The notes under the pieces: model-generated
What the model saw: the letters and a program-made list of their open reading frames with translations, nothing else
Told to the model about the DNA's origin: nothing
Database searches by the model: none
Source of the DNA: Botryllus schlosseri
Lineage: Eukaryota
Length of the DNA: 64,000 nucleotides
NCBI GenBank assembly: GCA_051294905.1
Contig: CM119381.1
Location: 21,576,001-21,640,000 of the forward strand
Direction of reading: 5' to 3'
Position numbers and translations under genes: made by a program
In this document: positions 3,970 through 42,417 of the stretch, piece by piece
How positions within the stretch are numbered: the first letter of the stretch is position 1
Layout: every line of letters starts with the position of its first letter

Positions 3970-4045
3970 ATGGCTGTAAAATATTATATAGCTTTACTCC
4001 TCTTTCTATTCGGATTACTACCAAAAGCGACTCCTCTTGATGACC
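3970..4045 (+). CDS. Gene A exon 1: signal peptide
   Basis: [25 protein letters not shown] (basic n-region, hydrophobic core), phase-1 donor GTGAGT. The paralog exon at 49199 is conserved. Confidence 0.88.
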
Positions 4046-7000
4046 GTGAGTATTTGTATTTGTATTAATTTTGATTGCGACCACTTCGCTAAAGGTGTCG
4101 GTAGGCTGGACCACATCATGTATTCGTGTCAAAAATGTCATTTTCCCGTGATGTCAAATAGACATATACATTTCCTATTTTACTGCTGATAATAGCACTA
4201 TAGCGGGGTGATCAGCCAGTTAGGACTGACGAGCCGCAATTTGTTTATATCAGAGGTAGGGAACTTATGGCCCGCGAGCCATATATGGCTCTTTTGATGA
4301 TTAAATATGGCTCTTTGATAAAATTCAATTTGCAACATTATTTAAATCTTATTTATTATTGTTGCCGCAAGATTTTGATATATTTTCAGAACGACTGGCA
4401 TCAGTATTGTTGTGGTTGATGAGACAAATGTTATGAGGTCAAGACAGTGACGCGTCCTGCCAGGGAGAGGAGCTCAAAACCTCAAAATCTTGAATCTTTC
4501 GTCATATATTGTCAGCCCAATTCAACGGATTTTCCGATAATAGTGCAAACACCCTACCTTCAAGTTATTTAGTGGAGTAGACCGGACAAATCGATACGAA
4601 GTTTACATAATGACAAAAACAAAGTTGCTGTCAATATCTTATGCAATATCATAATTCCCTGTACCCAATATTGCACGCCTAGAAAACTTGGATTGTACAA
4701 TGCGCTGATTAATCAGGGAGAAAAGCAGACGTGGCGTCGCCTGCATGATTATGGCTAAGCCGAATTGTCCTTTGATAAAATGTCGTTTTTCATTATATTT
4801 CATGCTCATTGCTCAAACGTCGCACAACCGGTGATTAGTGCGGGCTTTAAAACATCACATATGTATACACAGAAATATGGCGCACACAACGAATCACATG
4901 TAGTGAACATCGATTTCGTTCCAACATGACGTCGCTAGTATCAAATTGTGACGTAACACTCTATTGGACTCATTTTGTGGCTCTTTCAGATTTCGAATTG
5001 AAAATATGGGGTTAATCTGGTTCTATTGACGAAAAAAGTTCCCGACCCCTGGTTTATATGGTAAAGAATCGCTACATACATATGGGAGTACAGAAATAGC
5101 ATCTCCTATCTCTATCATAAACTCTGACCGCTCATTACTCGGATTTGGTGAAAATGTGGAATAATCAATTGTCCATGTTGGTAATTACTTATTTCATGGA
5201 TGAAAATTTCCCACAGGATCGTAACGTCAAGGAAGGATCGTGACGTAGCGAATAAACATGACGTTACATTCACCAAGTCTGAAATATAGTGACGAGAGTC
5301 AGGAGCTTCTGCCATTATGCAAAACCAGGCCCAGGGGCAGGCGACATCTCCAGTCGGCGGGCCGAATTACTGAATTGATACATTAATAGCGGATTCATCC
5401 GCCTATATACATGAAATAAATTGCATTGAATATAAACTTAAGTTTAAAGCATAGAGCACAGAATCAGTATTCAATTAATTTATTAACGCCACGTGGTCGA
5501 TGAAAGCTCAGTACAGACTGCACGAGCGAAAATGTTTTATCGCAAACGTATGTAGAATTGTAGACCCGCGTGCTACATTATCATGTAAGACCTGAAAGCG
5601 TCTGCGGGCCGCTCAAAATCCCGTCGCGGGCCGCATGTTGCCCGCCCCTGAACAGCCTATGAACACCAAAATTCTCCTCTCATTTTTGCTTAGCCATGAC
5701 CTTTCTCGTGGCATTAAGACATTTTCGTTTGTCTAACGTAAATCTTTAAATGCGAATATGCCGGTATGAAATCGTCGTTATTCAAAGACAAATCTATTTC
5801 AGCCCGATTATTGTAGTAATAAGTCAAGCCTATAAGCTATCAATCAATGACCTCGATATGTTGAAAATGATTTCCATTGTGCGAAGATACTGCATGCCGC
5901 TATAGTAAATTCGTATATTCTGTATCGGCAATATTTCGGTAATTTGTTCGCGGCAGCGAACTTGAATTTTCTATTTAGTTAATGTCGGACGATACTCTTC
6001 ATGACACCGAAATAAAATGCCTTATATATTTTCGGATCAATGTAGAGAACATAGACTTTTAGAGTATTAGGGATACGCGGCCTTTGTCACAATCTTAGAA
6101 TAGAGAAGAAGTATACTATAATTATAATTGGATACACCGCGTTGTGACAACTGAAAATACACAATTCATAGCTTTGACGCCAAGAGAAGCACAAAGCGTC
6201 GAAAAGAGCTGCGGTTAGGCTAGGCCTATTGTTCTGTAACTTTCTACAAATCACTAGCAACATACCTGCTTAAATCGTCAGTTACAGTAGAATGCATGAT
6301 AGACACATCCTTTTTCGATATTCAAAATAAGAATAACTTAACGATGTACCGCATGATGTGTCTCAACAGCTTGCAATGGAACAGAAGTCGTCGTCAACGG
6401 AACAAGTGGATCGATTTCATCCCCAAATTACCCGGACCTCTACGAAAACAACATGTTTTGCCGCTGGAGAATAAGTGCTTCGAACAACACGGTGTGGATA
6501 CGATGTGCAATGTGCATTGTGCATGCATATAGCATGTGATAAATAACACGTTGTTGTGCAGTAGGGGGTATATTAAAACCAAACCTGGTTTGACCTTATC
6601 GGGACCGTGCCATGACATCACTATATCGACTCGGGGGTCAGAATAAATTGGCCGAAATTAGTGAATGGATGATATATATTGGGGAATCCGGCCGTACGGT
6701 CGTTAGACTGCCAAATGATTCTAAGCCTCAAATTTTCCTTTTGTTCAACCGGCGCCTGCCGGCTCAACTTTTTCCAACTACATGTTACCGACATTCTGTA
6801 TTTAGAGGATAGAGGTGAAGTTCGAATCCTTATTTCAAGTCGAACCAACCAGTGCCAGTGGTTGCTATGACTATATTGAGTTCGCGGAAGTAAACAAGGT
6901 GCGTTATAAAAGTATATCTAAGTAATCAATTTTCAAGCCTCAGATATTGCGTTTGCATGTACACCAATATAGGAACTTTGCGGACTAACGGCTCCGCGGG

Positions 7001-10000
7001 GTTTCATCACGCCGAGCAATATGCTTTCGATATCATTTTTTACTGACGAATCTTTTACGTTGCGTGGCTATTCGTTCAACTGGACTGCGATCGGTGGGTA
7101 GTTGCTGTATATCGGAATTTGTGTTACGTTGTGAGGAACTTTGCAACACTTAATTAATAGCATGTAATAGACGATTAATAAGCCTTCAACTACGATTACT
7201 TTGTATCAGGGGATAGCGAAGTGCAGTTAATTAATTGACAATGTTATGCTGTCTCTCAGAATAAACAGTGGAAATTTGCCATACGGTTTTTGCCAGTTAT
7301 GCTGAAAATATTTTCTCTCCTTGTTACGTTTTGACTGGCTTCAAGGCCTTAAGCGCACAACCAGACTTGTACAAACTACTGGATTTTCAAAATGCACAAC
7401 TATAACTAGAACTAGAACTGCTCACGATCGAAGACATGACACGTTCTTGTCTATAGCTGATGTTGGTTATGTTTCATGTTTAATTACCGCCCGCGAAATG
7501 AATACTGCTGCTCGCTCCCAATTGATGCGCGAGATGGATGGAGAGATAGGCTCTATCAGTAGTAAAATGGTGTTTAGATGCATCACTGTTACCGGAACCA
7601 GTAACTACATATATCCACGGAGATTTCGGTCAAATTACCTCTCCCAACTACCCTAACGAATACGGCGATTTTCTGGAATATACTTGGATCATTAACGGAT
7701 CGTCCGGAAAGGTATATATGGTTTCGTAAATTCGCAATCAAAAGAAGGCTACATGATGATCACATTACGTGCATGAAATGAGACTTTCGGATCAAATGAT
7801 ATGACGATTATCACATGTATTTTATTCCACAATACAGAGTATGTTGGTGGAATTCGAACCGATTCTGGACATGCAAGAAAATCCTGGATGTATCAATGAC
7901 TACCTCGTTATCTCCGAAGGCTTGTCACCACCGAGCTCTATGGTAACGCCGCATGCCGGATTGAATGTGGACGAGTTTGACTAATTCTAATTGGTATTTC
8001 TTATTAGGATTATCAAGTCGTCATTTGCGGGTATACTTCACCGAAGGTATTTTTCTTTGACGACATCTACATCGTGTTCAAAACTGACTCCTCTATCGGC
8101 GGTGTTGGATTTTCATTGAACTTCTCTGCTGTTGGTAAGAATAGTTTTTCATTTTAGACACTTAAAGGCACTCCCTCACGCGTCTCCCCTAACCGCATGT
8201 CACTCCGCCCAGCGTAGTTATTTCAATCGAGCAGCTCATCTTGAAGTTATTCTGGAATAATGGTTGGGTATATCGCAGGAGAAAATGGATTATTGCAAAC
8301 AATTATTTTCCAAAACTCTAACAAAACCTCTCTAAACAGCAATATGTTTGGATCAGTAGACTATTGGCAATTAAAATGAGTTTGCGCGTGGAATATTTCA
8401 TCTCAGACGACCATTCCGTTTATGTGAGTTCGGAATTTCTAGCAGTTATGAAGCGAAACTGCCTAGTGGTTTCTCTTATTGAAAAATTCAAATTTCGTTA
8501 ACACTAACAACCACTTTGCAAATCTGGGTGTTTCGAGGACCCCCTGAACATGCTTCGCAGACTCCCGATTGAGAACCACTGCTATATACCGTGTTCAAAC
8601 TCTTCCCTTGCTATAGCTTCGGGAATGAGCAACGGACATGCTTCCAACTTCAATATATTCCAGAACCGTCGAATTCCCGAAGCACACTTACTTTTTAAAA
8701 CGCTGTGATCGTATTTTATTGCTGTAGACGAACCTACATGCAATGGCGTAACCCAACAAAACGGGTCATCTGGACATATTTCCACGCCGCTATACCCGAA
8801 TAAATACGCCCAATACATGGACTGTGAATGGCAAGTGGAAACCGCGGAAAATACGGTAAATTAGAATGCAGTACCGCAGATGTAAACAGTAAATTTCACA
8901 AAACCAAAAGTTATATATACATATTCGTACTGTAAACACTGTTTTGTTCAGGTCATCGCAGTGCGCTTCAACACAGACTTCTCAATTTTGTCCTTCGGCT
9001 GCTCCTTTGACTATCTTCAAGTATTTGACGGCACGAATTCGTCCTCCATACAAGTGAGTATGTAGAGGCGTTTAATCGGCAAATTACCGGACACGCACCG
9101 GGGATGACGCCAAAATAAGTGCGCCTGCGCCCTATGCCGCACAATTGTAAACACGTCACAAGGAGCGAATCGGCAACTCACTGGTAAAATTACCTACTTC
9201 TGATTTTGTTGGAGATATCTTACCGTCAGACGCGTGTATCCGAGATGTATCGCAATCAAAATTCTGAATTTTACCATCGGATCAAAGCCCATGCATCCAT
9301 ACTATAAGAGTCCGGGTTTCGCCGAAACTCACACGAATATTGAAGCCATGCGCCATGAACTCCAATCCGGTTCCGTGAAATTTGTAAATTCGAATCCGAT
9401 CGACCAGAATTCGTCACATCAAACCCCATGCTATTCCCACTCTATCACAGGGGAGTGACAGTTGGCAGTGTATTGTACAAAGTGTATGCACACATATAAC
9501 CTAAGAACGGCCTGAATACGCTCGGTTGAGCACAACCCGGACCGAACCCGACATATGACATTGCAGCCGAAAGTCAAGTGAAAATTTAATATCGATGATG
9601 AGTGGTTTGAGAATGCGGGAAGCTTAAAGCCTGAAATATTTTCCAATGTTGATGCAACTCGGCAGGATTCCCGCCTCCAGTCAGGCGGATCGCGGAACTT
9701 GGTAATAGCCCGCATTCACAATTCGCATTCACAGACACTTGTGTGAAGTCACGCATGACGCAGTCCTGCATCCAGATTTTACGGCCTTGCAACTCAGCTC
9801 GCCCTGACGAATACAAGCCAACAGCCTGGTTGCCAGTAAGTAACACATGGTAAAGTACGTAATTTTTCCAGTTCCAACATAACTTTTGTGGCGAACGAGC
9901 GCCGCGATCATTCGTCACAACTGGAAATCACCTTTATGTTCGCTTCGTGACTGCTGACATCAACAACGACAATTTCGGGTTCTCGATAAAGTGGGAGGCT

Positions 10001-13000
10001 GAAGGTACGCGGTGATACGGCAAAAATACAAAGACACTCGCAACCGATACATTTTCGTTCTAGTGAAGTGTGACGCCAACCAGTTCACGTGCTGGGACGG
10101 TACATGCATCTCAGATTCTTTGAAATGTGACGGTCAAGAAGACTGCCCAAAGGATATTGCAGACGAAGCCTCTTGTGAGTACATCTGCAGTTTGATCTCC
10201 GTATAAACAGATCACTGAAGCCTATATAGTTTGAATGCTGATATTATAGGACTAACATTAGACAAATGTGGAATCAGAGAATGGTCCGTAAAGAAGTACT
10301 TCTACTGTTTCGCTTACTTGCTCCACTTCCTCAAGTGGTTATGATGTTGGAGTACTTCTGCTTCAGAAATTTACGACATTACTTCTTCTACTTGAGTACA
10401 AACGGTGACTACTTTGCCCAGCTCGACTAAAACTCTATATCAGTGGTTCTCAACCTTTTATGTCTTCGTGGACCCCTTTTGCGCCGACAAGGACCCTGCG
10501 GACCCCACAAGTTTTCGTTCAAATTTAGCTCCATTAAAGCTAGTGACAACAACAAATTATCATCACACTATTTATGTGGAAATTGGGTAGACGGTAGCGA
10601 ATTCTCAAGCTGCATTTCTTGAAATATGTGGCAGCGTCTTGAAAATCCGCGCCTTCGATTTGATATGAACGAGCGTCGGACATTTTTTTCTACAGATATA
10701 GGTGATGGCGAATGGCATAATAACGAGCGCCGACGACCTCTTTGAGTATGATCGCAGCATATATACCACCAAAATTGAAACTCCGATTTTTTCTGAACAT
10801 ATCACGTCCATCCTAGTCATTTTCATCTAGCAGCACATTTTGAAGTTGTCCTGGGATAGTGCTGGTTATGTATATCACAGGAAAATGGATTTTCGCAAAA
10901 TATTTAAAGTCACGCTGATTGACCTTACTATTCCAACTTTTAAAAAAAATTCCTCAAATCCCAACAAAACATCTCCAATCGGCAATATGTTTGTATCAGT
11001 AGGCTATGGGCAATTTGGCAATTGAAATGAGTTTTAACAGTAAGATATTTCATCTCAGACGGCCATTATGTTGATGTGAGTCATGAAGTTGCAGCTGTAA
11101 TGAAGCAAAATTGCTTGGTAATAATCAATCATTTGAAAGTTGAGAGGTTTCGCGGACCCCCGTGAAAATGCTTCGGGGACCCCCGGTTGAGAACCACTGC
11201 TCTATCTCGAGGTTGATGATTCTTTTCAATGGAAATATGTAAACTCTAAGCCAGTTGTTCCCAACGTGAGCTATATCGCCCCCAACTGGGCGATTTTGAA
11301 CAAAGAAGGGGGCGAAAATACCAAAAAGGGTCCACTAGGATATATTTAATTTACACGGCCAACCAAAACGCACGTGCAGACAGCTTTGTCTGCATATGAC
11401 GCGAATGTTGACTAAAAAAAGGTCAACTCAACGGAAACTACTCGAACAATAACCCTTTTTCAGATAATTCAACAGCGATCAGAGTTATGTGAATATATTT
11501 CCCGTTTGTATGTCCTCTTTTCCAGACGCATAGATATGGGGGGCGAATATTTGTGTCGAGCTTGATATGGGGGCGATGATTCGAAAAAGGTTGCGAACCA
11601 CTGCTCTAAGCAAAAAGAGCGTGTATCCACACCGAAATGTTAGTACGCTAACACGAATACAGAACCTAACTCAAAATCATATCGCAGTCATAAATCCTAC
11701 GTAAACCACGCGCATACCTTACCTTATTTGGATTGAAATATTGTACTCGATTCATAACGCAGTGTAAGTTTGAATTAGGTTATGGTTCCATGTGTTATGG
11801 GAGTATATTCACATCCGTATATGGTGGTACACGGCTGGAGATTCAAACACTTTTCGCTGAGATCGTATAGTTTCTTACTCTTCACGTAGAAAGAGCTATT
11901 TTCGTCCCCATTCACATTAGACCAAATTCAAAACCCAATTCGGCGTTGTTAGTGAGTCCAAGGGGTGTATTCCGCAATGTGAAATGTTACAATATAATAA
12001 TTGGAGAGCTTCGTGGAGTTAGAGAATTTCGATAACTGGTATAAATCATTATGTACTGCCGAAATGTACTATTTATGAATACGTCGTGAACTCTCGGAGT
12101 AAAGACTTTGTTCTGTGACCAAAATTCACCCAGATATGTGGTTAAAGATGTATAAAATGCCTATCTCGGTTGATTTACCACACTAACAATGGCGAGATAT
12201 ACGAAGAGATCGATCGTAGTTCATGTTCTCTTTCCCCACTCATTCGAAGCTTGATTGAAATATTCGAACGCGTCCACGCCCCGCGCACTCGCGAGTGGGC
12301 TGCAATAATTTTGCAATATGGTTCAACTCTGGTACAAGTTCATGAGTAAATGAGCGATGTGTTCGACGTCGGATATTTAAACATGCAGATTGTAGCGTTG
12401 GCACTGCGATATAATTGTTCAAATCTCCAATCATAGGTATAATAAGTTTAGAGAAAAGATGTGCAGACCGACAAAGTTTTTTTCAAGCAAATGCCGTTAC
12501 AATAATCGCGTTTAGGTCCTATCGCGGATTCAGAGCAATGCGGCATTTCGGAAATCTCACCGGAGTACAAATGGGTAAGATATTGTGATTTTCTGCCATC
12601 ACATTCTATTATCTCCAACTGCTTTTAATAGGACAAATCCATGCAGACATGCCACAATACAAAACTATTGTACGCCTACAAAGACTTATTCAAAACAAAA
12701 ATAAAGTAGGCTAGTATCCAATTTATGTGCCTATTTCGAAACGATCCATCATGTTCAGATTGTTCACTCTCCAATCTCCGAAATAGTATAGTTGAATAGT
12801 AATGTATAGTGAACACCAGTCAGGAATCTTCGCGCTACACCGTGCGCATAAACAGCCCTTTGAACTCCGGTGCCATCACGGAAGTTGTAGACTCGAAGAC
12901 CCGTGGTAGCCAACGTATTGTGTATTGTATAGTTTAGTCTCTAGCAACATTTAACTAAGTCGGATCACGACACGATTCACTTACCTTACACACCAAATAA

Positions 13001-31000: not shown

Positions 31001-32539
31001 TTCGTTACTAACCACCTCTGCATATCGAACACTATTGTCAGCGTCACGCATGCTAAAAATACTCCCTCCATGAAAAGCCCAGAGGAAGAGAGAGCCGAAC
31101 TCTAGAAAGATGACAGCAAAAAAAGACCAGAAAAGAGGACGCAAGTAAAGCGTAAAGACATTACGAAAATTACTGTGCGGGCGCAAATGACCCAAGTGTT
31201 TATAAGCGCCAATTGTGTTATTAAAACAAACGAATTCCTACCTAAGTCACGGTTCGTTGGCGATGACGTCGACAATAATTAAAATTCCATGGAGGTTTTG
31301 GATATCATACGGTCGGCAAGATATTGGTATATTTTGCCTAATTTATTAAAATTCATCAAACCTTTTCAACTTTTCTAATCTCTACTATGTCGGTACCACA
31401 GAGGAACAGTTTTAATTATTTCAATACGATTCCAAACTGTTTACTATTATGATGTCATATTCAGTTATTATCCAATACGCGACTCGTAATCCATGTTTGA
31501 TGACGCATCAACTTCGCCAACATCCACTGTGGCACTTCAATCGGACATTAGGACATTTTGTAACGTATGATGTCTTATTTCTATACCACATCATTAGTTT
31601 TTTTACACCCTCCTGTAGTTAAGATGGTGTAATATATATTACTCTCTCTTTCCACTCTCTAAATGCCTATTTTTTGATTTACAGTGATACTATACGAAAA
31701 ATTCTTACAAACATTATCCTTCATGTTTACAGTGATCAACGACTTACAAAGTAAGTATTTCAAAATACACCACTCAGACCTCTTTTGTGTTGCGACATTG
31801 GTTCTAATTGTCTTATTCCATAAAATGAAGTATGTTCTGAGCTGGATATTATCGACGACAAAGACGAAGGTGTGATTGTGCCTCCAATATTCGCTGGAGG
31901 ATATTTAGACTCTACTCAGTGCAGCTGGCTTATACGCGGAGCACCGAACACCGTAAGTGTCGCCCTATCATAGGTTGACAAAATTTCGCCGTGGTATTGA
32001 TGAACTTCCAATACCAATAATTGTACTGTAATGTAAACTAGAGTTCAATATCTTCGAAATCCAATTAACCGCAAACATCCATAACGCCTTGGTTAGGGTT
32101 GCATTTAAAACAAAAATAAATTCAAAACAAACATATTTACAGGACGTTTTTTATTGTTTTATTTTGTCATGACGTCACGAATATTTATTGGGTTGGCATT
32201 GACAATTGAAAATATAGGGTAAATATAGGGCCCCTTCGGCGTAAAGGACTTCCGACCACTGTCATCATAAGCAGACCAAAAATATCTTTAACCAGGACTA
32301 CATCGCTATGCAGCATTTTTGCTGTCGGCGGTCATCATCATCGAAAGACCCATTCCGTGCCAGTGATCTATCTTCGCCCATGTGTTGTGTTGTGTTGTGT
32401 GATCTATCCCTGCCTATGTGTTGTGTTGTTTTGTGTGATATATGTTTGCCTATGTGTTGTGTTGTGTGATCTATGTTTGCCTATGTGTTGTGTTGTGTTG
32501 TGTGAACTATCTTTGCCTATGTTGTTGTTCTTGTTGTAG

Positions 32540-32571
<32 letters not shown>

Positions 32572-35500: not shown

Positions 35501-38500
35501 GACGGAAAGTCGGACTGCGCCGATGAGAGCGACGAAAAAGAATGCGGTGAGTAGCCCTGGCTAATGGTACCGTGACATGTTCGTGATACATTTTGCAATG
35601 CGCATTTTAGTGATTGTCGACGGGGAGTGCGGAAAACAAGACATCGCCCCCGAATTTTTGTGGGTATGTATTCGAGCGAACTGAATCTCTCATCCGCAAG
35701 TCGTGAGATTGTCTTTAAACCGACTCTCTTATTTGTAGCACGCAAGAATCGTCGGCGGACACTTGGCGAAAAACGGTTCGTGGCCGTTCATTGCGCAAAT
35801 AGAAAACGCTTTTCTTGAAGACTTCTTGTGCGCCGGTACCATCGTCAACGATCGATGGGTTCTCACGACCGCTGCTTGCGTGGACTCGCACATTGCGTAA
35901 GTATGTGTATGTTGTATGCTACTCAAGTAGAAGCTGAAGTAACATCGTACATTTTTAATCTATATAAGTGGAAATAGAAACTGAAATCGCTGGAACATAT
36001 TCAAGTAAGTGGTTTTTAAAGTATATTTGGTCGCCAGTGGCTATAACTTTCCAAATCGCAAGATGCATTTTCGCGCCTAACGCAAAAGGACTAATGAATA
36101 ACACTACATACAAATAGGAACAGTCGTCCAAAGTCTATTCAGTTATACAAAGTCCACATATACGAGATATAAACAGAAAAATATCTACATGTAGACTGAT
36201 GGATTTACAGACGCAGATTATGACAAGACCATATTGGAGATAGTTACGCAACCTCAATTTAAACTTGGGTTCAAGTTCAGAAAATCACTCTCAATAACTC
36301 TACATTCGAGGATGGTATTACGTAAAACCTCACCGTGCGAAAAATGCATGGAATTAAAATACGAGTTAGGAAATGTTGCAATTGTTACGGAGGCATCGAA
36401 TTGATATGACAGATGACTGATGCGTAACAGACTTATTGCTTGACGTGGTACAACATAATCTGATCAAATGTAGTAATTTGTTATTAAGGCATAAATGATC
36501 GTTCTCTTAACGAAAACCACGCAAATAAATAATAAAGGGATGCGATTTGGAAATGTGGCGATCGAGTTACGAATCAGTACCATTCTTGGCAATTTTCAGG
36601 GTTGATCTCCTCGTGACAGTGGGTACCGTTTCTTTCCTTCCGTCGGACGTTATGAAGTACGACGTCGAGTTAATCAGTCGACCCCGAGAGTAAGTGACAG
36701 CATATATTCGATCAGCATCTCGACAAGTGACGTGAGCTTATGGGGCAACCGTTTCAGGTCAATTTTAACGCATCCGGAAGGAGCTGGTCTTCTGAAACTT
36801 TCAAAAAACATCGCGTTTTCTTCTTTCGTGCAACCGGCATGCATAGCCATCGCTGGCCTGACAAATGAACCTGAACCGGGTGAATTCTGCGTTGTACTGG
36901 GATGGGGCTCCAGACGTGAGTGATTCGTGAAATGAAATTATTCGATATAGCTGTAGACCAGTGGTTCCCAAAGTGGGCGCCAGCGCCCCCCTGGGGGCGT
37001 TCGCGTGCGTCAAGGGGGCGCTGGCCATGAAATGGGCGATTGGGGGTCGCTGGCTAGAAAATTGGGCGGTAGGGGGGCGCTGAGAGCAAATGCGGGCGGT
37101 GTAGAATTAAAAGGCAACTGCTGCATATAGTGTTGAAACGATTAATTATTAAAGCAGCTAGATTCGCAGTAAAAATGCATAATAGATTCAGTAAGGGCAA
37201 TTTAGGGTTCTCCGTCTATTTATTCAGCTGTACCGGAAAAGTCCATTGTTGAACTACGAAGTATAATTGAACAATTATTGCTCCCTGCAAGATGTGATGG
37301 CTTTTTAAGAGAAACTGTCTTGCGTGATTTTATTATCTGTTTCAAACGATCGTGGATTTTCCACAGCGCTGTCACCGTGACCTTCGACACGGTGTTATGG
37401 TTGCGTGAAACGACATCACTCCTAATTGACTGTCGTATTTCTCAAATTTAAGGTTAGAATATATCCGTTCTTAGTAATGATGAACATGGCACTGTCCGTA
37501 TTTGGTGACAAGTCAGCAGGGTTGTAACCAAGTCACAAAGCACCGAGTCACAAGTCAATCTCAGTTCTATGGTTTTGACTCGAGTCAAGTCGAGTCATTT
37601 TCAATTCACCACCGAGTCAAGTCCGAGTCCAAGTCAGCGAAAAGAGAGTCGAGCCCGAGTCACGGTATTATGACTCGAGTCGAGTCCAAGTCATTGTGTT
37701 GACTGATCAGTTTCCTGTTAATTTCTTGTTAAACCTATCTTTTATAACTCTTTTTGGTGATATCGACTGGTTCGCATTAATAATGTACTAATTTTCATCG
37801 CTTTTAGCAGTTTCTGGTCGCATTTTCAAGTACCAGTACCAATAAACGAAATCCCAATATTGTGTTTACTATTCTTCGAAATTACAATGAAATGTTGGTC
37901 TTGGTCGTCTTCGTCTCGAGTCATATGACTTGGCTCGAGTCATGCGCAACGACTCGAGTACAAGTCGAGTCAATACACATATTGACTCGAGTCGAGTCGA
38001 GTCATTTCCGTATTTTGGGAAAATGACTCAAGTCGAGTCATCAGAAAATCGTGACTCGAGTCGGACTCGAGTCGAGTCATGACTCGAGTCATTACAACCA
38101 GCTGCAAGTCAGTGATAATTCACCGGAATTTTGCGACACATCAACTGTTTCAATTCACAAGCTTGCTTTGAGTTACCGGTCCAGCTCGAACACCTGATTT
38201 TGAAGGAGAAACATGAGTCAATCAACTCACAAAATTACACGAGGATGGTGATTTGGTTCCAGGATATATTCCAATTAGAAATTCCTCACCGGATAATCAA
38301 TCCATTCTGTGTAGTTTCCGGGCACAAAATGTTAGAGCAGCTGATTACATTGTAGTTATAGGGTTACCATACGTCCTCTTTTAACGGGATTTGTCCTCAT
38401 TATTGAGTTTTTTAAAAGTTTCCTTGGATGACGCCTAAATGTCCTCTTTTTTGAGAATTTGTACTCTTTTTTTAATATTATGGTTAAATGTACGTGGAAA

Positions 38501-41500
38501 TTGAACTGAGATATAGGAAATCAGCGCTCGAGTAACGGTCTGGGGGGTTTTTCTGGACCTGAGCCGGACAAATGACTTCTTTTTTTAGTCGACCAGCCAC
38601 TAACTCGGAAAAAATTTACAATTTTTTCCCGATTTTACTCCAGTATTGTAAGTCTGGAAATTTTTAAAAAGCGTCCTCCTTTCAGATGCCCAAAATATGG
38701 TAACCCTAATTGTAGTGTAGAACAATTTTGATTTGAACCAAAAATTAAATATCTCCAATCAAGCGTTCTGGATGCACAATTGAATAAAAAATAAACACTC
38801 TCACTGGAGTCGGGCTGGCTTTCTCGCCATTGCCCTTCCCCGCTCATTTCATAGAACGTGTTCTCAGCGCCGTGACCAAGTCCCTGACTCACAACAGAAA
38901 CCGACTTGCCAGTGGGCCTACATGAAGTGAACACTGGAGATTTTAGACTGATATTGTTCTTATCAAAACTCAAACTCATTATGACGAGCATGATGATAAT
39001 AATACACCAACTCATCTGTCTCATTACTAGCTGTAATAAATGCAGAACAACATTCGTTTTACGATTTAGGCGTGGTGAGGGGGGGGTGTCGGGGGGGCGG
39101 TGGCACTTATTTCGTTGTCCAGGGGGGCGGTAGCTCAAAAAAGTTTGGGAGACACTGCTGTAGACCGTCAAGCGCGAATTCCATTGAAATTTCGACAACC
39201 GTTATTCTTTTGTTACACGTGTTCGTATGCGAAATCCATCAAACAAGAATTCGTTTTGTCCCAAGTACATCTCTGAAACGGGCTATACTTGCTTGGGTTG
39301 CCGAACAGATACCGGTATAGTTGCCAATCCCTATTTGGGCCGCGCTAGGTCAGATTTTTGCGTTGTGAGATTTCCCAAACTATGCAATTTTAAGAACATA
39401 TTTTAATATTCTTCTTTTGGACCTGTGCGTGTCATACATACAGTTGTCTCTGGCCGCATGCGCACGCCTATGAACATAATATGTTACCATATAAAAATTG
39501 TGATTTTAGTCTCCGAGCGCCTTGAATCCGGGCCCTTGCGACAAGCTCAAGTGCCCATACAGCACGAAGACGTATGCGCCGCTTCTCGTCCGTATGGAGA
39601 TGCCAACACAACATTCTGCAGCGGCGACAGTATAAACGGCGGTGTGGGCACATGTGCGGTAAGTTCGAGCTCAACACTGGCGTGGTTGAATGTGATTTAG
39701 AAATTCTCTTTCTCGAACAGTCCGATCGTGGCGGGCCAGTTATGTGCTTTCGAGACAACGTCTGGGTACAATTCGGAATTGTCGTCCGTCCGTCGTGCGC
39801 GGAATTCGGAGTTTTCGATTTTTATACCAGGGTTTCGTATTATACCGACTGGATAGAAGACAGTGAGTATATATAGCGGTGGTTCTTCACTCAGTGATTA
39901 CTGACCGTTACATTCGGTCCCAAGGGCGAACATAGAGATGATAGGCGGCGTATTGTTGACGAATATCGTCTAGTTCACCCATGTCCACCATAACGTATTA
40001 AAGGTGCACATCCGGGTAAACTGCAGGACTTATGTACGTGATTTAACGTTGCCAAACATCTTGATTATTGGGTATCCTTCCTTACCCAAGTAAAAAATAC
40101 GCATGATTTATAGAAATGGGCATTTCAGCGTCGGCCATTACCGCGCCACTTCGCACCAAGACATATGGAGTTTTATGCCATGTAACATGCGAATGCGAGA
40201 AGTGTGCCCGAACGATCGGCAGCGAGAAAACCTTGGCCGAAAAGGACTGCCGTTATGCTGGCCGAATACTTCGATAGATACACATATGTGTAATTGTCCA
40301 TAGGTGTCCAAATGGCTGGCGCCTAATGTTCCTGTCCTGACAATCTGAACCCCACAAGACAAATGCCAACCCGCGGAGAAGTATTTTTTGCCAGTGAAGA
40401 AATTTGAAATTGTTTTCATCTTTTAGTTTAGTACGTTTGGGCGATTTCAATGTCTTTTGACATAGCCGACAGGAGTTCACGAAATAACATCATGTAACGA
40501 AGTCACTATACCTAAGGGTCTGCCCGAATATGTTTGATTATTATTTACGGGCTCTACATTTTCCAAGACACCTCACTTAGCTCTACCGGAAGATATTATT
40601 ACGTGTGCAGAGAGGGGATAGCATTTTGGTATAGCAATATCTATATATGCAATTCCCGATCGGATTGACCGCTTCAACCATGAATTAGAGAAAATGTGCT
40701 GCTTACAAGAGACATTCAGGGTCTTGCTAGCATTCCTGGATTGCTTGACTAGTCATTATAAGCCGATGCTAAGAATCTGTCATAACCCCATAACCGCGAG
40801 TATTCTATACTAATACAGGGCGATGTGTGCGTGTAATGGAAAGTTCTGTGTCTTCAAAGCGACCTGAATATATACATGCGTATAAGTGTATATGTATACT
40901 AATTCATCATTGGTTATTCAAAGTTTCATCTTCTGTTAGCTATAAAAATGACGCTGCCTAAGCATACTGTTGACGACACCACCGTGACGCCGATATATAC
41001 GAATTCGACTACACATTCCGCTGCCAATACGTTATCGACCACCTCGATCTCGACGACGAATACATCACATACCGGTGAGATATTATTACTAGCATATATT
41101 ACTCTAGGTTTAACTAGAGAAAAGGTTATGATGAATATACACTGAACTAAAATATGACCAACGCACTGAAGTTGTGCTAATTCAAATGGAAAAGGGCACA
41201 AACACCGGCACATTTCTTTGACACAGTTATATCAATATCTCACTTGATGCGCCGCTCCAATGATAAAAACTGTTTACATAATATGTTCTATTGCGTCGGC
41301 AAATCAAATTATGCATCTTACATGATATAGATATGATGAAATGCTACGATGTATTTGTTCATATTTCAAAGATTTCTCGGAATGGATGTTATTACCGTGT
41401 GTCACGATTTGTCGCTGTTATTTGTTTTTTAAATAAATATGGTTATTTTATTTATTGTCGTGAATTACAGTAACCGCCACCGATGAAAGTACGTCATCAC

Positions 41501-41902
41501 CTGCCGGTGAAGTAACCCAATCGACACATAATGTTACAGGTAAGCCTTTTTCACAGCTTAACGCTTGTTTAGTGTAGTCCGTACTTAAGCCCAAATATCC
41601 TGAAACAATGATCTCCAAACATATACAGACGTATTATATAGTGTCTACCGTATATATAGTATATCAGTAATTGTGTGATATTGTAGACCTCTCTCCGGAA
41701 AAATTTTGGCGAAGAATTTTCCATGCCATGGCCGTATAATCAACACAATGACATTACAATGTATCTAATCGAAATTATTGAATTTAATTTTTATATTTTA
41801 GTGGCGTCAACCACCTCAGCAGCTATCACAGCATTTCCACTGCACGTTCTACCGCTGACGATTCTATTGGTGACGATTAATTCATTGGTCGAAGGATGTT
41901 GA
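3970..41902 (+). CDS. Gene A: multi-domain, predicted GPI-anchored poly-serine-protease (ovochymase/polyserase/matriptase-like module set), 42 exons, about 1616 aa
   Basis: Exons, all GT-AG and phase-compatible: 3970-4045, 6370-6491, 6806-6898, 6973-7093, 7578-7711, 7838-7942, 8008-8134, 8728-8855, 8952-9053, 9872-10004, 10064-10174, 12516-12574, 16347-16504, 19100-19207, 19353-19510, 19977-20125, 21594-21738, 22540-22572, 22643-22758, 25497-25610, 25672-25804, 25883-25993, 26065-26120, 26610-26764, 26978-27088, 27394-27542, 28491-28648, 28713-28851, 31733-31750, 31831-31952, 32880-32981, 33875-34010, 35433-35546, 35611-35663, 35739-35896, 36600-36689, 36758-36915, 39510-39658, 39721-39862, 40940-41074, 41471-41539, 41802-41902. 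The sum is 4851 nt with no internal stop. Domain motifs are recognisable throughout. Confidence 0.9.
4251..5051. mobile_element. Charlie-type hAT MITE, 801 bp
   Basis: TIR CAGAGGTAGGGAACTT/AAGTTCCCGACCCCTG; perfect TSD GTTTATAT. Confidence 0.88.
5332..5650. mobile_element. Charlie-type MITE
   Basis: TIR CAGGGGCAGGCGACAT/ATGTTGCCCGCCCCTG with GCGGGCCG subterminal motifs; TSD degenerate. Confidence 0.7.
6370..10004 (+). CDS. Gene A exons 2-10: three tandem CUB domains (CUB1-3)
   Basis: [22 protein letters not shown]...CYDYIEF...LCG...FFTDES..GYSF; [12 protein letters not shown]...GCINDYL...ICG...[11 protein letters not shown]; [12 protein letters not shown]...CEW...[11 protein letters not shown]...FCG...FGFSIKW. 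Each domain has 3 exons with phases 1-0-0-1. Confidence 0.93.
10064..12574 (+). CDS. Gene A exons 11-12: LDLa domain 1 and activation linker
   Basis: [36 protein letters not shown](C), then [19 protein letters not shown]. Confidence 0.92.
10441..11199. mobile_element. Charlie-type hAT MITE, 759 bp
   Basis: TIR CAGTGGTTCTCAACC; TSD CTCTATAT/CTCTATCT; related copies at about 8240-8581, 56425-57244 (inverted) and 59419-59838 (inverted, deleted). Confidence 0.88.
11252..11603. mobile_element. Charlie-type hAT MITE, 352 bp
   Basis: TIR CAGTTGTTCCCAAC/GTTGCGAACCACTG; perfect TSD CTCTAAGC. Confidence 0.88.
14480..15621. mobile_element. Interspersed DNA-transposon-like repeat family (CAGGGCCGTAACTG-type end)
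   Basis: High similarity to about 24240-25038, about 40085-40500 (inverted) and 61927-62030 (inverted end). The left boundary is approximate. Confidence 0.7.
16347..21738 (+). CDS. Gene A exons 13-17: S1A serine protease domain 1, intact triad, chymotrypsin-like pocket
   Basis: HSR-IVGG, SWPWQ, LTAAHC (His57), YDIAVL (Asp102), GWG, STCQ-GDSGGP (Ser195; Ser189), ITSFG (Gly216), IPGSY (Gly226). Confidence 0.95.
16664..18480. mobile_element. Charlie-type MITE with a nested hAT element, present in A intron 13 but not B intron 13
   Basis: CAGTGGTTCTCAACT left end, degenerate GAACGACTG right end; flanks align to B at 63326-63460 and 63720-64000. Confidence 0.65.
17482..18374. mobile_element. hAT MITE with CTCGAGTCAAGT subterminal repeats (CAGTGTTGGGA termini)
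   Basis: TSD GTGTAATG/GTGTATTG (7/8); inverted copy at 60786-61788. Confidence 0.85.
20297..21510. mobile_element. Composite Charlie-type element with an internal fragment of the CAGGGTTGTAA family
   Basis: Left TIR CAGTGGTTCTTAAAC; TSD GCCTATGG/TCCTATGG; 3' part resembles about 28150-28390. Confidence 0.55.
22036..22228. mobile_element. 193-bp hAT MITE
   Basis: TIR CAATGATCCCTCTAA/TTAGAGGGAGCATTG; perfect TSD ACTAGGAC; second copy at 50491-50682. Confidence 0.88.
22643..26120 (+). CDS. Gene A exons 19-23: CUB4, LDLa2 and linker
   Basis: [14 protein letters not shown]...[11 protein letters not shown]...ICG...[16 protein letters not shown]; [35 protein letters not shown]; [14 protein letters not shown]. 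Confidence 0.9.
26610..28851 (+). CDS. Gene A exons 24-28: S1A serine protease domain 2, intact triad, elastase-like pocket
   Basis: TPL-IVGG, SWPWQV, LTAAHC, NDDIGFL, GWG, GACF-GDSGGP (Gly189), ASFI (Ile216). Confidence 0.95.
31831..35663 (+). CDS. Gene A exons 30-34: CUB5, LDLa3 and linker
   Basis: [11 protein letters not shown] / [27 protein letters not shown] / LCG...[16 protein letters not shown]; [36 protein letters not shown]; [14 protein letters not shown]. Confidence 0.9.
32378..32585. repeat. Compound minisatellite (about 30-35 bp, TGTTG-rich units) running into (GTT)n
   Basis: Repeated CCTATGTGTTGTGTTGTG..TGATCTAT units, then GTT triplets. Confidence 0.9.
33075..33670. mobile_element. 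hAT MITE (CAGGGTTGTAA termini, CTCGAGTC repeats), 596 bp
   Basis: Perfect TSD ATTATCCC; sister copy at 37517-38104. Confidence 0.9.
34330..34549 (-). mobile_element. tRNA-derived SINE-like element
   Basis: The minus strand begins AGCGAGTGGCGCAGTTGGTTAAGCGC (A box) ... GGTTCGAATCCC (B box). There is no acceptor-stem pairing, so it is not a tRNA. The 3' end is approximate. Confidence 0.65.
35739..39862 (+). CDS. Gene A exons 35-39: serine protease homolog domain 3, catalytically inactive
   Basis: HAR-IVGG, SWPF, LTTAAC (His to Ala), EGAGLLKL (Asp lost), GWG, TCA-SDRGGP (Ser to Arg). Fold cysteines are retained. Confidence 0.92.
36959..39157. mobile_element. Charlie-type hAT element hosting two nested MITEs
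   Basis: TIR CAGTGGTTCCCAAA/TTTGGGAGACACTG; perfect TSD CTGTAGAC; nested 37517-38104 (TSD CAAGTCAG) and 38359-38708 (ATTGTAGT duplication). Confidence 0.88.
40940..41902 (+). CDS. Gene A exons 40-42: Thr/Ser-rich stalk and C-terminal GPI-signal-like tail
   Basis: [34 protein letters not shown] / [22 protein letters not shown] / [32 protein letters not shown]-stop, with no cytoplasmic basic tail. Confidence 0.8.
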
Positions 41903-42417
41903 ATCGTAAACGTTGCGCATTCGTATCCAATCAAGAACTAATTTTTACTTGAATTACCAAACACAACACCGTAGCTATAGGCCAGGCCTATTTTGCGAAT
42001 TTCATAAGAATATTACCTACTAATAATATAATCTGTGAAATAGCCACGGCAGGGGGCGAACGACACTTTTTTAATCCTTATGTCCATTGGTTAATTGTAA
42101 TATCCCTTAGTCTTGATATACCTACTTCTTGCCATATTTACTCGTTTACAACTCCACTGGGTGGCGACTGATAAGACCTTCCGGTCCCCCGTCGTCTCCC
42201 AATTCATACCGATTTACATGTTGTGGTTGTTGCTGAGATGAGTAAAACATACTGACTAGCTGACCCTTCCTAATTTTCTATCGGCTCATTACCGCGTCAT
42301 ATTTACTCCCTACGTAACATTGTAACACTGGATGTGTGACGTCATGTCATTGTTCATAAATTTCGCCCCTATGAATATAATAGCTCATGTGCTGCAGCAC
42401 GTATTAATGCCGTGAAA

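What the first reader, a model, noticed from the sequence alone, without database searches (positions are those of the whole stretch)
3970..41902. Hidden 42-exon gene for a triple-protease mosaic: CUB3-LDLa-SP / CUB-LDLa-SP / CUB-LDLa-SPH / stalk / GPI
Seen: a frame-consistent model of about 1616 aa that the ORF track does not show. Established: ovochymase has several protease domains with CUBs but lacks this repeated LDLa unit; polyserase-1/TMPRSS9 has three protease domains (third inactive) on a type II anchor; matriptase has CUB-LDLa-SP with one protease. I do not recognise a described protein that repeats a CUB-LDLa-SP unit three times on a C-terminal GPI-type anchor. Inference: a lineage-specific cell-surface polyprotease, for example in fertilisation, egg coat processing, epithelial barrier or innate immunity.
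Basis: partly seen in the sequence, partly recalled or inferred. Interest (0 to 1): 0.85.

Follow-up and report, generated by a model that had tools for sequence, protein, structure and literature searches.

The report
Ascidian membrane-tethered triple serine-protease gene
The hidden gene is real: about 41 small exons spread over 38 kb encode one large sea-squirt surface protein with two working protease domains and one dead one, and near-identical but unstudied predicted proteins already sit in public databases for other sea squirts.

Summary
Observation confirmed. A frame-consistent gene on the + strand runs from the ATG at 3970 to the stop at 41900-41902. It has 41 GT-AG exons and encodes 1632 aa, or 42 exons and 1614 aa if a doubtful 54-nt intron is spliced. 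Layout: signal peptide, CUB x3-LDLa-SP1, CUB-LDLa-SP2, CUB-LDLa-SP3, Ser/Thr stalk, hydrophobic C-terminal tail. SP3 has lost all three catalytic residues.

RNA contigs from two independent runs confirm six junctions. These include the SP2-to-CUB5 join, which passes through an 18-nt micro-exon. The SP1-to-CUB4 join has no RNA evidence. It rests on a predicted 33-nt micro-exon that matches one at the same place in the Styela clava orthologue.

The claim of no counterpart is only half right. RefSeq holds predicted Styela clava proteins (auto-named "TMPRSS9-like") with the identical layout and 45% identity. Clavelina and a sea urchin have similar repeats. I found no functional study of any of them.

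A per-domain tree shows the triplication predates the split from Styela. A tandem paralogue starts near 47.7 kb (dN/dS 0.27). The GPI anchor and the SP1-activates-SP2 relay are inferences.

The scan noted this gene once more in an overlapping window of the same genome, not on other DNA.

Interest is moderate: a new variant of the polyserase/ovochymase kind.

The parts
3970..4045 (+). Exon 1: start codon and signal peptide (25 aa plus 1 nt, phase-1 donor)
   Evidence: ATG at 3970, a 13-14 residue hydrophobic core, and a GTGAGT donor. 86% nt identity to the paralogue exon at 49199-49274.
6370..7093 (+). CUB1 (exons 6370-6491, 6806-6898, 6973-7093)
   Evidence: Pfam CUB hits at E 3.7e-8 (N part) and 4.7e-3 (C part). 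Splice joins.
7578..8134 (+). CUB2 (exons 7578-7711, 7838-7942, 8008-8134); lacks the first CUB disulfide
   Evidence: Pfam CUB. The 7578 acceptor was chosen over 7602 because it restores 8 aa that align with Styela, and because coding conservation continues in paralogue B.
8728..10004 (+). CUB3 (exons 8728-8855, 8952-9053, 9872-10004)
   Evidence: Pfam CUB hits at E 5.8e-6 and 8.9e-5. Joins.
10064..10174 (+). LDLa1 (a single phase 1-1 exon)
   Evidence: Pfam Ldl_recept_a at E 4.9e-9.
12516..12574 (+). Linker 1: holds the Cys of a 'CG' motif and the residues leading into activation site 1
   Evidence: Join scores. 86% nt identity to the paralogue. Aligns to the Styela linker exon.
16347..21738 (+). 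SP1 protease domain (exons 16347-16504, 19100-19207, 19353-19510, 19977-20125, 21594-21738). Activation site R|IVGG; triad H57/D102/S195; pocket residues S189/G216/G226
   Evidence: Pfam Trypsin hits at E 2.9e-11, 2e-8 and 4.4e-8. Residue table. Ends in a strong phase-1 donor (score 8.7).
22540..22572 (+). Predicted 33-nt micro-exon joining SP1 to CUB4 (no RNA evidence)
   Evidence: By far the best AG..GT in-frame candidate in the intron (score 12.7), with tttcag/gtgagc flanks. Styela has a 33-nt micro-exon at the same junction. Including it removes the alignment gap.
22643..25804 (+). CUB4 (exons 22643-22758, 25497-25610, 25672-25804)
   Evidence: Pfam CUB C part at E 2.4e-7. The N-part exon has no Pfam hit, but it resembles the first exon of CUB1 and aligns to Styela.
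25883..25993 (+). LDLa2
   Evidence: Pfam Ldl_recept_a at E 6.1e-8.
26065..26120 (+). Linker 2: 'CG' motif and the lead-in to activation site 2
   Evidence: The joint 26120>26610 is seen in RNA contigs X7 and X25.
26610..28851 (+). SP2 protease domain (exons 26610-26764, 26978-27088, 27394-27542, 28491-28648, 28713-28851). Activation site L|IVGG; triad intact; pocket residues G189/I216/S226
   Evidence: Pfam Trypsin hits at E 1.8e-15 and 1.2e-5. All four internal junctions are seen in RNA contigs. Residue table.
31733..31750 (+). 18-nt micro-exon joining SP2 to CUB5 (supported by RNA)
   Evidence: 18 letters lie between the two sides of the 28851>31831 joint in X7 and X25 (table 5c). They are found at 31733-31750 with 1 mismatch, flanked by tttacag/gtaagt. 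Styela has a 15-nt micro-exon at the same junction.
31831..34010 (+). CUB5 (exons 31831-31952, 32880-32981, 33875-34010)
   Evidence: Pfam CUB C part at E 6.4e-5. The RNA joint ends at 31831. Joins.
35433..35546 (+). LDLa3
   Evidence: Pfam Ldl_recept_a at E 1.6e-10.
35611..35663 (+). Linker 3: 'CG' motif and the lead-in to activation site 3
   Evidence: Joins. Aligns to the Styela linker exon.
35739..39862 (+). SP3, a protease homologue without a triad (exons 35739-35896, 36620-36915, 39510-39658, 39721-39862). R|IVGG is kept; A57, G102 and R195 replace the triad
   Evidence: Pfam Trypsin hits at E 4.4e-9 and 5.8e-4. Residue table. Exon 36620-36915 is fused where Styela and SP1/SP2 have a phase-2 intron. 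An alternative 54-nt intron at 36727-36780 is not excluded.
40940..41539 (+). Ser/Thr-rich stalk (two phase 1-1 cassette exons, 40940-41074 and 41471-41539)
   Evidence: 32 of 69 residues are Ser or Thr. Joins. Styela isoforms differ only by stalk cassette exons.
41802..41902 (+). Last exon: small residues (TSAA), short spacer, hydrophobic tail, 3 more residues, then the stop at 41900-41902. This has the format of a GPI-attachment signal
   Evidence: The acceptor follows a long T-rich tract. The 15-residue hydrophobic core (KD 2.22) ends 3 residues before the C-terminus, with no Lys or Arg after it. The same holds in Styela and Clavelina homologues and in database proteins named prostasin and testisin-like.
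49199..63326 (+). Tandem paralogue (copy B), exons 1-13. The rest lies beyond the window
   Evidence: All 13 exons have the same length and keep AG/GT. Identity is 83% aa and 88% nt, with no stop and dN/dS 0.27.

Best explanation
**The gene (shown).** This is one expressed protein-coding gene of an ascidian (tunicate), about 38 kb long with 41 exons. It encodes a 1632-aa mosaic polyserine protease.

**Protein layout (shown).**
- a cleavable signal peptide
- three CUB domains
- three units of [CUB]-LDLa-linker-S1 protease domain
- a mucin-like Ser/Thr stalk
- a short hydrophobic C-terminal tail

**The three protease domains (shown).**
- Each has its own zymogen activation site.
- Each is preceded by a linker Cys ('CG' motif) and keeps Cys122.
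- SP1 has an intact triad and a chymotrypsin-type S1 pocket (S189, G216, G226). It is opened by cleavage after Arg.
- SP2 has an intact triad and a non-tryptic, narrowed pocket (G189, I216, S226). It is opened by cleavage after Leu.
- SP3 has lost His57, Asp102 and Ser195, so it can only bind, not cut.

**How it most likely works (inferred).**
- The protein is displayed on the cell surface by a GPI anchor added at the small residues before the tail.
- After activation cleavages the chain stays tied together by linker-Cys to Cys122 disulfides, as in matriptase-type proteases.
- An outside trypsin-like enzyme cuts the Arg sites. Active SP1 then cuts the Leu site of SP2, on the same or a neighbouring molecule.
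- The CUB and LDLa modules and the dead, membrane-proximal SP3 act as calcium-dependent docking surfaces for substrates or partners.

The tissue and the substrates are unknown.
For: **Gene model.** Independent reconstruction gave all GT-AG introns.

**Domains.** Pfam hits on single exons. Architecture from my own HMMs.

**Single transcript.**
- RNA contigs of two runs from different studies splice SP2 to CUB5 through an 18-nt micro-exon. They also confirm five other junctions.
- One 1203-nt contig runs on downstream from that joint.
- A 1160-nt contig covering the linker-2 exon and SP2 exons 1-3 extends about 770 nt further upstream. That is about 295 nt more than CUB4 plus LDLa2 need.
- No ATG plus hydrophobic ORF lies in either inter-module intron.
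- All three protease domains end in homologous phase-1 donors.

**Orthologue.**
- Styela XP_077973721.1 is collinear over the whole length, 44.9% identity.
- It has the same exon plan, including micro-exons at both inter-module junctions.

**Selection.** The tandem paralogue gives dN/dS 0.27 over 489 codons.

**Residues.** Catalytic, pocket and activation-site residues come from an alignment numbered on a fish chymotrypsin A.

**Dead third domain.** It is shared with the two nearest Styela genes. The SP1, SP2 and SP3 positions form separate clades with 97-100 support.

**Tail format.** It is shared with the homologues and with database proteins named prostasin and testisin-like (GPI status of prostasin and testisin from PMC7834812).

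**Relay hint.** The P1 class of the SP2 activation site follows residue 189 of SP1. It is Leu or Val with Ser/Gly189 in the window gene and three Styela genes, and Arg with Asp189 in Clavelina.
Against: - The SP1-to-CUB4 junction and its 33-nt micro-exon have no RNA evidence here. Only homology and the contig-length argument support them.
- No GPI predictor and no experiment was available. A tail-less type I anchor or release from the membrane is possible.
- The relay rests on at most two independent evolutionary events, because the stolidobranch genes share ancestry.
- Chymotrypsin-type enzymes cut after Leu less well than after aromatic residues.
- One bulk RNA run (X23, about 6% of reads sampled) gave no exon reads, so expression is not general.
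- The fused SP3 exon could hide a 54-nt intron.
Confidence: 0.8

Rival explanations
1. The three modules are separate tandem genes, or separate main transcripts. The long model joins them artificially.
For: A stop codon follows 24 codons (SP1) and 8 codons (SP2) after the inter-module donors if these are left unspliced. Single-unit CUB-LDLa-SP proteins exist in amphioxus and Limulus. The SP1-to-CUB4 join has no direct RNA evidence.
Against: The SP2-to-CUB5 splice is seen in RNA contigs of two runs. No start codon with a signal peptide lies in either intron. The donors are phase-compatible, and both micro-exons are conserved with Styela. Styela and Clavelina proteins are collinear across all modules. 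The position-specific domain clades show the units have travelled together since before the split from Styela.
Confidence: 0.04
2. Same gene, but the C-terminal hydrophobic segment is a tail-less type I transmembrane anchor, or is simply clipped so that the protein is secreted. There is no GPI anchor.
For: The hydrophobic stretch is about 22 residues long, enough to span a membrane. No predictor or experiment was run. The anchoring of some similar vertebrate proteases is disputed in the literature (PMC7834812).
Against: Only 3 residues and no basic residue follow the hydrophobic core. Small residues (S-A-A) sit about 7-10 residues before it. The same format recurs in four homologues despite little sequence conservation.
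Confidence: 0.3
3. Intron retention or exon skipping yields shorter products as well: a secreted CUB3-LDLa-SP1 form, or forms with different stalk lengths. The locus would then make a family of proteins.
For: In-frame stops follow soon after the inter-module donors. The stalk exons are symmetric phase 1-1 cassettes, and Styela isoforms differ only in such cassettes.
Against: No such isoform was seen in the contigs laid here. The contigs show the spliced form at 28851.
Confidence: 0.2
4. A decaying duplicate: one of two tandem copies on its way to becoming a pseudogene.
For: SP3 has lost its triad and sits on a long branch (2.06) in the tree.
Against: The 4899-nt ORF is intact across 41 exons with all splice sites in place. 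The gene is expressed. dN/dS against the paralogue is 0.27. The dead SP3 is also kept in two Styela genes, and the window gene's SP3 retains Cys122 and the activation site.
Confidence: 0.02

Closest known systems
Styela clava LOC120348119 (XP_077973721.1, 'transmembrane protease serine 9-like isoform X1'), with paralogues LOC120348165 and LOC120347557
   Same: Identical domain order: CUB3-LDLa-SP-CUB-LDLa-SP-CUB-LDLa-SP, stalk, hydrophobic tail. Collinear over 1591 columns at 44.9% identity. Same exon plan, with micro-exons at both inter-module junctions. Leu (Val in LOC120348165) at the SP2 activation site. SP3 is inactive in LOC120348119 and LOC120348165. The genes lie together on one chromosome-scale contig.
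   Different: These are predicted proteins only, with automatic names and no functional study found. The substitutions in SP3 differ (E57 and V195 or T195, with D102 kept). Styela keeps an intron in SP3 that is missing here. LOC120347557 has an active, trypsin-type SP3.
Ovochymase (vertebrate OVCH1/2; Halocynthia roretzi HrOvochymase)
   Same: A secreted polyprotease with a signal peptide and three S1 domains interspersed with CUB domains. In HrOvochymase the third domain lacks the triad (PMC9265791). Ovochymases were the best non-tunicate full-length hits.
   Different: The order is SP-CUB2-SP-CUB3-SP, so the protease comes first. There are no LDLa modules and no stalk or hydrophobic C-terminal tail. 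In the tree, the ovochymase domains fall outside the window+Styela clades.
Polyserase-1 / TMPRSS9
   Same: LDLa followed by three tandem S1 domains in one chain, the third being inactive. It is membrane-bound. It is the source of the automatic name given to the Styela proteins (established knowledge: Cal et al., cited in PMC11172050).
   Different: It has a type II N-terminal signal anchor rather than a signal peptide plus C-terminal tail. It has no CUB domains, and a single LDLa rather than one per protease.
[quoted passage not shown]
   Same: A CUB-LDLa-protease stem. An activation site preceded by a Cys that stays disulfide-linked to Cys122 (established knowledge; PMC7834812).
   Different: One protease per chain, a SEA domain and an N-terminal anchor. 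The catalytic domains are trypsin-type (D189).
GPI-anchored S1 proteases (prostasin/PRSS8, testisin/PRSS21)
   Same: A signal peptide and a C-terminal hydrophobic propeptide of the same format.
   Different: A single protease domain with no CUB or LDLa modules. They are trypsin-type.
Lytechinus pictus LOC135156797 (XP_063966351.1); Clavelina lepadiformis (CUB-LDLa-SP)x3 and x5 proteins
   Same: Repeated CUB-LDLa-SP units in one predicted chain.
   Different: Their protease domains group by species in the tree, so the repeats arose separately or were homogenised. All the Clavelina domains keep the triad and have Arg activation sites. Most are trypsin-type (D189); two domains of the x5 protein have G189.

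Membership tests
S1A (chymotrypsin-fold) serine proteases, Pfam PF00089 | Trypsin-fold domain recognised by the family profile | tested here: met
   The first and last exons of all three domains hit PF00089 from profile position 1 to 220. Full domains were found by my own HMM.
S1A (chymotrypsin-fold) serine proteases, Pfam PF00089 | Catalytic triad His57, Asp102, Ser195 | tested here: met
   Met for SP1 and SP2. Not met for SP3, which has A57, G102 and R195 and is therefore a protease homologue.
Tunicate CUB3-LDLa-SP/CUB-LDLa-SP/CUB-LDLa-SP family (Styela LOC120348119 group) | Same domain order over the full length, and collinear alignment | tested here: met
   Identical architecture string. 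A single BLAST HSP covers residues 1-1508. 44.9% identity with no junction gaps.
Tunicate CUB3-LDLa-SP/CUB-LDLa-SP/CUB-LDLa-SP family (Styela LOC120348119 group) | Each protease domain is orthologous by position | tested here: met
   The SP1, SP2 and SP3 clades have support 100/97, 100/99 and 97/93. In each, the window gene is sister to Styela LOC120348119 plus LOC120348165.
Polyserase-1 / TMPRSS9 (type II transmembrane serine protease) | N-terminal signal anchor (type II topology) | tested here: not met
   The N-terminal hydrophobic core is only 13-14 residues and is followed by a small-residue cleavage motif. The only hydrophobic stretch near membrane-spanning length is at the C-terminus.
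Polyserase-1 / TMPRSS9 (type II transmembrane serine protease) | Three tandem protease domains directly after one LDLa, with no CUB | tested here: not met
   Five CUB and three LDLa domains are interleaved with the protease domains.
Ovochymase | Protease-first order SP-CUBn-SP-CUBn-SP without LDLa | tested here: not met
   Frog OVCH1 reads SP-CUB2-SP-CUB3-SP, whereas the window gene reads CUB3-LDLa-SP.... HrOvochymase layout from PMC9265791.
Matriptase subfamily | SEA domain, type II anchor, single protease | tested here: not met
   The Pfam scans and my own HMM scan found only CUB, LDLa and trypsin domains, and the collinear Styela proteins carry no SEA family in their Pfam listing. There are three protease domains, and the anchor is C-terminal.
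GPI-anchored proteins | C-terminal signal: small omega residues, a polar spacer, and a hydrophobic tail at the extreme C-terminus | tested here: inconclusive
   The format fits by inspection and by a hydropathy check against database proteins named prostasin and testisin-like. No dedicated predictor was available.
GPI-anchored proteins | Lipid anchor actually attached (release by PI-PLC) | not testable with these tools
   This needs an experiment.

The most novel reading that the evidence does not exclude
The protein is a self-contained, membrane-tethered zymogen relay. An outside trypsin-like trigger opens the chymotrypsin-type SP1. SP1 then opens the Leu-gated SP2, which has a different, narrower specificity. 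The catalytically dead, membrane-proximal SP3 keeps its Arg activation site, so it may be cleaved and refolded like an enzyme, and it serves as a substrate- or inhibitor-docking module. This would be a two-step protease cascade plus a decoy written into one disulfide-tied polypeptide. Stalk length would be tunable by cassette exons.
Probability: 0.2. Interest if true: 0.6.

Novelty: new variant of a known kind. Interest (0 to 1): 0.38.

Why it matters
Multi-protease polypeptides (polyserases, ovochymases) are known, but their logic is poorly understood. It is unclear why several protease domains, one of them dead, sit in a single chain.

This tunicate family offers a clean natural experiment:
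- Its three domains have three different states: chymotrypsin-type, narrow-pocket and dead.
- Each domain has its own CUB-LDLa docking stem and its own activation site.
- The P1 residue of one activation site appears to track the pocket of the upstream domain.
- The closest studied ascidian relative, HrOvochymase, processes the egg coat and controls self-sterility. A surface-tethered cousin is therefore worth placing by cell type.

For genome annotation, the case also shows that 15-33 nt micro-exons link the modules. Automatic names such as 'TMPRSS9-like' hide a distinct architecture.

It is not a surprise at the level of a new principle.

Tried and rejected
1. I first took the block at 18507-18727, which is conserved with the paralogue, as SP1 exon 2. 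No frame gave a trypsin-like peptide. The real exon is 19100-19207, and the block is conserved intron.

2. I tried 36195-36401 as SP3 exon 2. No usable splice pair exists and the peptide is not trypsin-like. I replaced it with the acceptor at 36620, which aligns with Styela.

3. Splicing 35896 directly to 36758 is frame-compatible. It deletes about 46 residues between His57 and Asp102 that all homologues have, so I rejected it.

4. A 54-nt intron at 36727-36780 would give 42 exons. It is not adopted because it removes the conserved 'HP' strand, is shorter than any intron in the gene (the shortest is 59 nt), and has a weak acceptor. It is not excluded.

5. A phmmer search of 1.8 billion cluster representatives with the SP3 exon found no close orthologue by itself. 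It did bring in the Styela protein P0006, which led to the family.

6. I searched with Styela residues 590-980 to fish for transcript-derived peptides of this species across the SP1-CUB4 junction. None was found; the top hits were amphioxus single-unit proteins.

7. Raw reads of the bulk RNA run X23 gave no exon coverage at 6% sampling.

8. Five literature searches for a described protein with this layout found none. The Botryllus rejection-EST paper lists serine protease ESTs, but nothing that can be tied to this gene.
Full report
**What is in the sequence**

The window has about 41% G+C and no N. Stop-free segments on the + strand between 4 and 42 kb carry the hallmarks of:
- three trypsin-fold domains (IVGG, TAAHC, GDSGGP or variants)
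- three LDL-receptor class A modules
- several CUB pieces

For each pair of neighbouring coding segments I listed every GT donor and AG acceptor that keeps the frame open. I then chose by splice score and by similarity among the three modules.

Three corrections followed, giving 41 exons, a CDS of 4899 nt and 1632 aa, with all introns GT..AG and 59-3772 nt long.

Exons:
- 3970-4045
- 6370-6491, 6806-6898, 6973-7093
- 7578-7711, 7838-7942, 8008-8134
- 8728-8855, 8952-9053, 9872-10004
- 10064-10174
- 12516-12574
- 16347-16504, 19100-19207, 19353-19510, 19977-20125, 21594-21738
- 22540-22572
- 22643-22758, 25497-25610, 25672-25804
- 25883-25993
- 26065-26120
- 26610-26764, 26978-27088, 27394-27542, 28491-28648, 28713-28851
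- 31733-31750
- 31831-31952, 32880-32981, 33875-34010
- 35433-35546
- 35611-35663
- 35739-35896, 36620-36915, 39510-39658, 39721-39862
- 40940-41074, 41471-41539
- 41802-41902

**Domains**

Single exons, given to Pfam by reference, hit three families:
- CUB at profile positions 1-36 and 74-110
- Ldl_recept_a, three times
- Trypsin at profile positions 1-46, 86-130 and 178-220, for all three protease domains

HMMs built from the model's own domains read the architecture as CUB-CUB-CUB-LDLa-SP-CUB-LDLa-SP-CUB-LDLa-SP.

Other features:
- The N-terminus is a signal peptide with a short hydrophobic core.
- The 69 residues after the third protease domain are 46% Ser/Thr.
- The last exon ends in a hydrophobic 15-mer (KD 2.22), 3 more residues and the stop.

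**RNA evidence**

Many RNA runs of the same species hold exon words of this gene. Contigs of two RNA runs from different studies (X7, X25) were laid on 26001-32000.

They show joints at exactly the predicted sites: 26120>26610, 26764>26978, 27088>27394, 27542>28491 and 28648>28713.

They also show the inter-module joint 28851>31831 (GT..AG, depths 18.6 and 20):
- That joint carries 18 extra letters. These map to 31733-31750 with one mismatch, flanked by tttacag and gtaagt, so they are a micro-exon. It adds six residues, roughly where the Styela protein had extra residues.
- The X7 contig that holds this joint is 1203 nt long and continues downstream.
- Another X7 contig (1160 nt) covers the linker-2 exon and SP2 exons 1-3. 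It extends about 770 nt upstream of the laid stretch, about 295 nt more than CUB4 plus LDLa2 can fill. This suggests, but does not prove, that it crosses the SP1-CUB4 junction.

Raw reads of one bulk RNA run gave no exon coverage at 6% sampling, so expression is not ubiquitous.

**Relatives**

A phmmer search with the SP3 exon returned multi-protease proteins. One of them, from Styela clava, aligned with the model over 1349 columns. Searching with it found more:
- Styela clava XP_077973721.1 (1633 aa, 'transmembrane protease serine 9-like')
- two paralogues on the same 22-Mb contig
- two Clavelina lepadiformis proteins
- a Ciona savignyi fragment

The Styela protein aligns with the model from residue 1 through the end of SP3 (residue 1508) in one HSP. 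After the three corrections, identity is 44.9% over 1591 columns with no gap of 4 or more at an internal exon junction. Its C-terminus is also a Ser/Thr stalk plus a hydrophobic tail.

Mapping that protein onto its own locus shows about 43 exons. The plan is the same:
- phase-1 donors at the end of SP1 and SP2
- a 33-nt micro-exon between SP1 and CUB4
- a 15-nt micro-exon between SP2 and CUB5

In the window, the best in-frame AG..GT candidate between SP1 and CUB4 is also 33 nt: 22540-22572, score 12.7 against 5-6 for unrelated candidates, with tttcag/gtgagc flanks. I therefore include it, marked as predicted.

Neither inter-module intron contains an ATG followed by a hydrophobic stretch.

Together these results make the 'three separate genes' reading very unlikely.

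**Open point in the model**

In SP3, the exon 36620-36915 is continuous where SP1, SP2 and Styela SP3 have a phase-2 intron after the 'HP' strand. Reading through keeps that strand (..THPEG/AG..), so an intron loss is the simplest reading.

A 54-nt intron at 36727-36780 is frame-compatible. But it deletes the strand and would be the shortest intron in the gene.

**Catalytic and specificity residues**

Numbering is on a fish chymotrypsin A.

| Domain | Triad | Residues 189 / 216 / 226 | Activation site | Cys122 |
|---|---|---|---|---|
| SP1 | H-D-S | S / G / G (chymotrypsin-type pocket) | ..HSR\|IVGG | present |
| SP2 | H-D-S | G / I / S (non-tryptic, narrowed pocket) | ..TPL\|IVGG | present |
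| SP3 | A57, G102, R195 | not applicable | ..HAR\|IVGG | present |

Each linker exon carries a 'CG' Cys. In matriptase-type enzymes the equivalent Cys pairs with Cys122 (established knowledge). The activated chain should therefore stay disulfide-tied; this is an inference.

In the relatives:
- SP3 is also inactive in the two nearest Styela genes (E57; V195 or T195).
- SP3 is active in the third Styela gene and in Clavelina.
- The P1 residue of the SP2 activation site is Leu or Val wherever SP1 has Ser/Gly189 (the window gene and three Styela genes).
- It is Arg where SP1 has Asp189 (Clavelina).

This fits SP1 activating SP2, but it amounts to two independent observations at most.

**History**

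A maximum-likelihood tree of 31 protease domains groups window and Styela domains by position. Support is SP1 100/97, SP2 100/99 and SP3 97/93.

Within each clade the window gene is sister to Styela LOC120348119 plus LOC120348165. The triplication and the death of SP3 therefore predate the split of this species from Styela.

Clavelina, Ciona savignyi and sea-urchin repeats group by species, so they are independent or homogenised repeats. The window SP3 sits on a long branch (2.06).

Single CUB-LDLa-SP units occur in amphioxus and Limulus.

A tandem paralogue begins near 47.7 kb:
- Its exons 1-13 keep length, splice sites and frame.
- Identity is 83% aa.
- dN is 0.089, dS is 0.33, and dN/dS is 0.27.

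**Comparison with the known**

- HrOvochymase of Halocynthia is a signal peptide, SP, two CUB, SP, three CUB and a triad-less SP. It processes the egg-coat protein VC120 (PMC9265791). The theme is the same. The order differs, and it has no LDLa and no anchor.
- Polyserase-1/TMPRSS9 is a type II membrane protein (PMC7834812). By established knowledge it has one LDLa and three protease domains, the third inactive.
- Matriptases share the CUB-LDLa-SP stem.
- Prostasin and testisin share the GPI-type tail.
- Insect 'polypeptidases' with Leu|Ile activation sites have also been catalogued (PMC11172050).
- Five literature searches found no description of the present layout.

**Verdict**

It belongs to an unstudied tunicate family that is already present as predicted proteins.

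GPI anchoring (about 0.6-0.7) and the built-in relay (about 0.2-0.3) are inferences.

The species is an ascidian, nearest to Styela among the sequences available. I did not identify it further.

Noticed in passing
window 47700-64000: Tandem paralogue of the gene (copy B). The upstream region and exons 1-13 are alignable with copy A, and exon identity is 81-94% nt.
   Followed up: partly
window 30000-31200 (intron between SP2 and the 18-nt micro-exon): This stretch reaches word depths in the thousands to tens of thousands in every contig run laid, and raw RNA reads of X23 cover it on both strands with many loose ends. It looks like a high-copy, transcribed repeat or mobile element.
   Followed up: no
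window 33040-33740 and 37480-38190; also 17470-17640, 18230-18380, 20440-20860: A dispersed repeat family inside introns, in the same orientation. The two long copies are 70-80% alike at the translated level.
   Followed up: no
window 14640-15500 and 24210-24910: Another intronic repeat pair, 40-80% alike at the translated level. The ORF lists suggest a related piece on the other strand near 40100-40480.
   Followed up: no
window 22039-22228 and 50494-50682: A 190-nt element at 84% identity. It is present in the SP1-CUB4 intron of copy A and in the intron after exon 2 of copy B, so it is not positionally homologous.
   Followed up: no
window 32210-32630: A low-complexity tract rich in TGT/GTT. 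It gives poly-Cys and poly-Val ORFs in all three frames, inside the CUB5 intron.
   Followed up: no
window 26600-31960 (exons): RNA contigs differ from the window at about 2-6% of exon positions. Two allelic forms of the micro-exon and of exon 28713-28851 are assembled side by side, which points to a highly polymorphic species.
   Followed up: no
window 41903-43500: No AATAAA or ATTAAA lies within 1.6 kb downstream of the stop codon, so the 3' end of the transcript is not defined.
   Followed up: no
L001 (Styela clava OZ123522.1, 11527580-11560699): The isoforms of the Styela orthologue and of its paralogue differ only by in-frame cassette exons in the Ser/Thr stalk. Stalk length therefore seems to be regulated by splicing.
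   Followed up: partly
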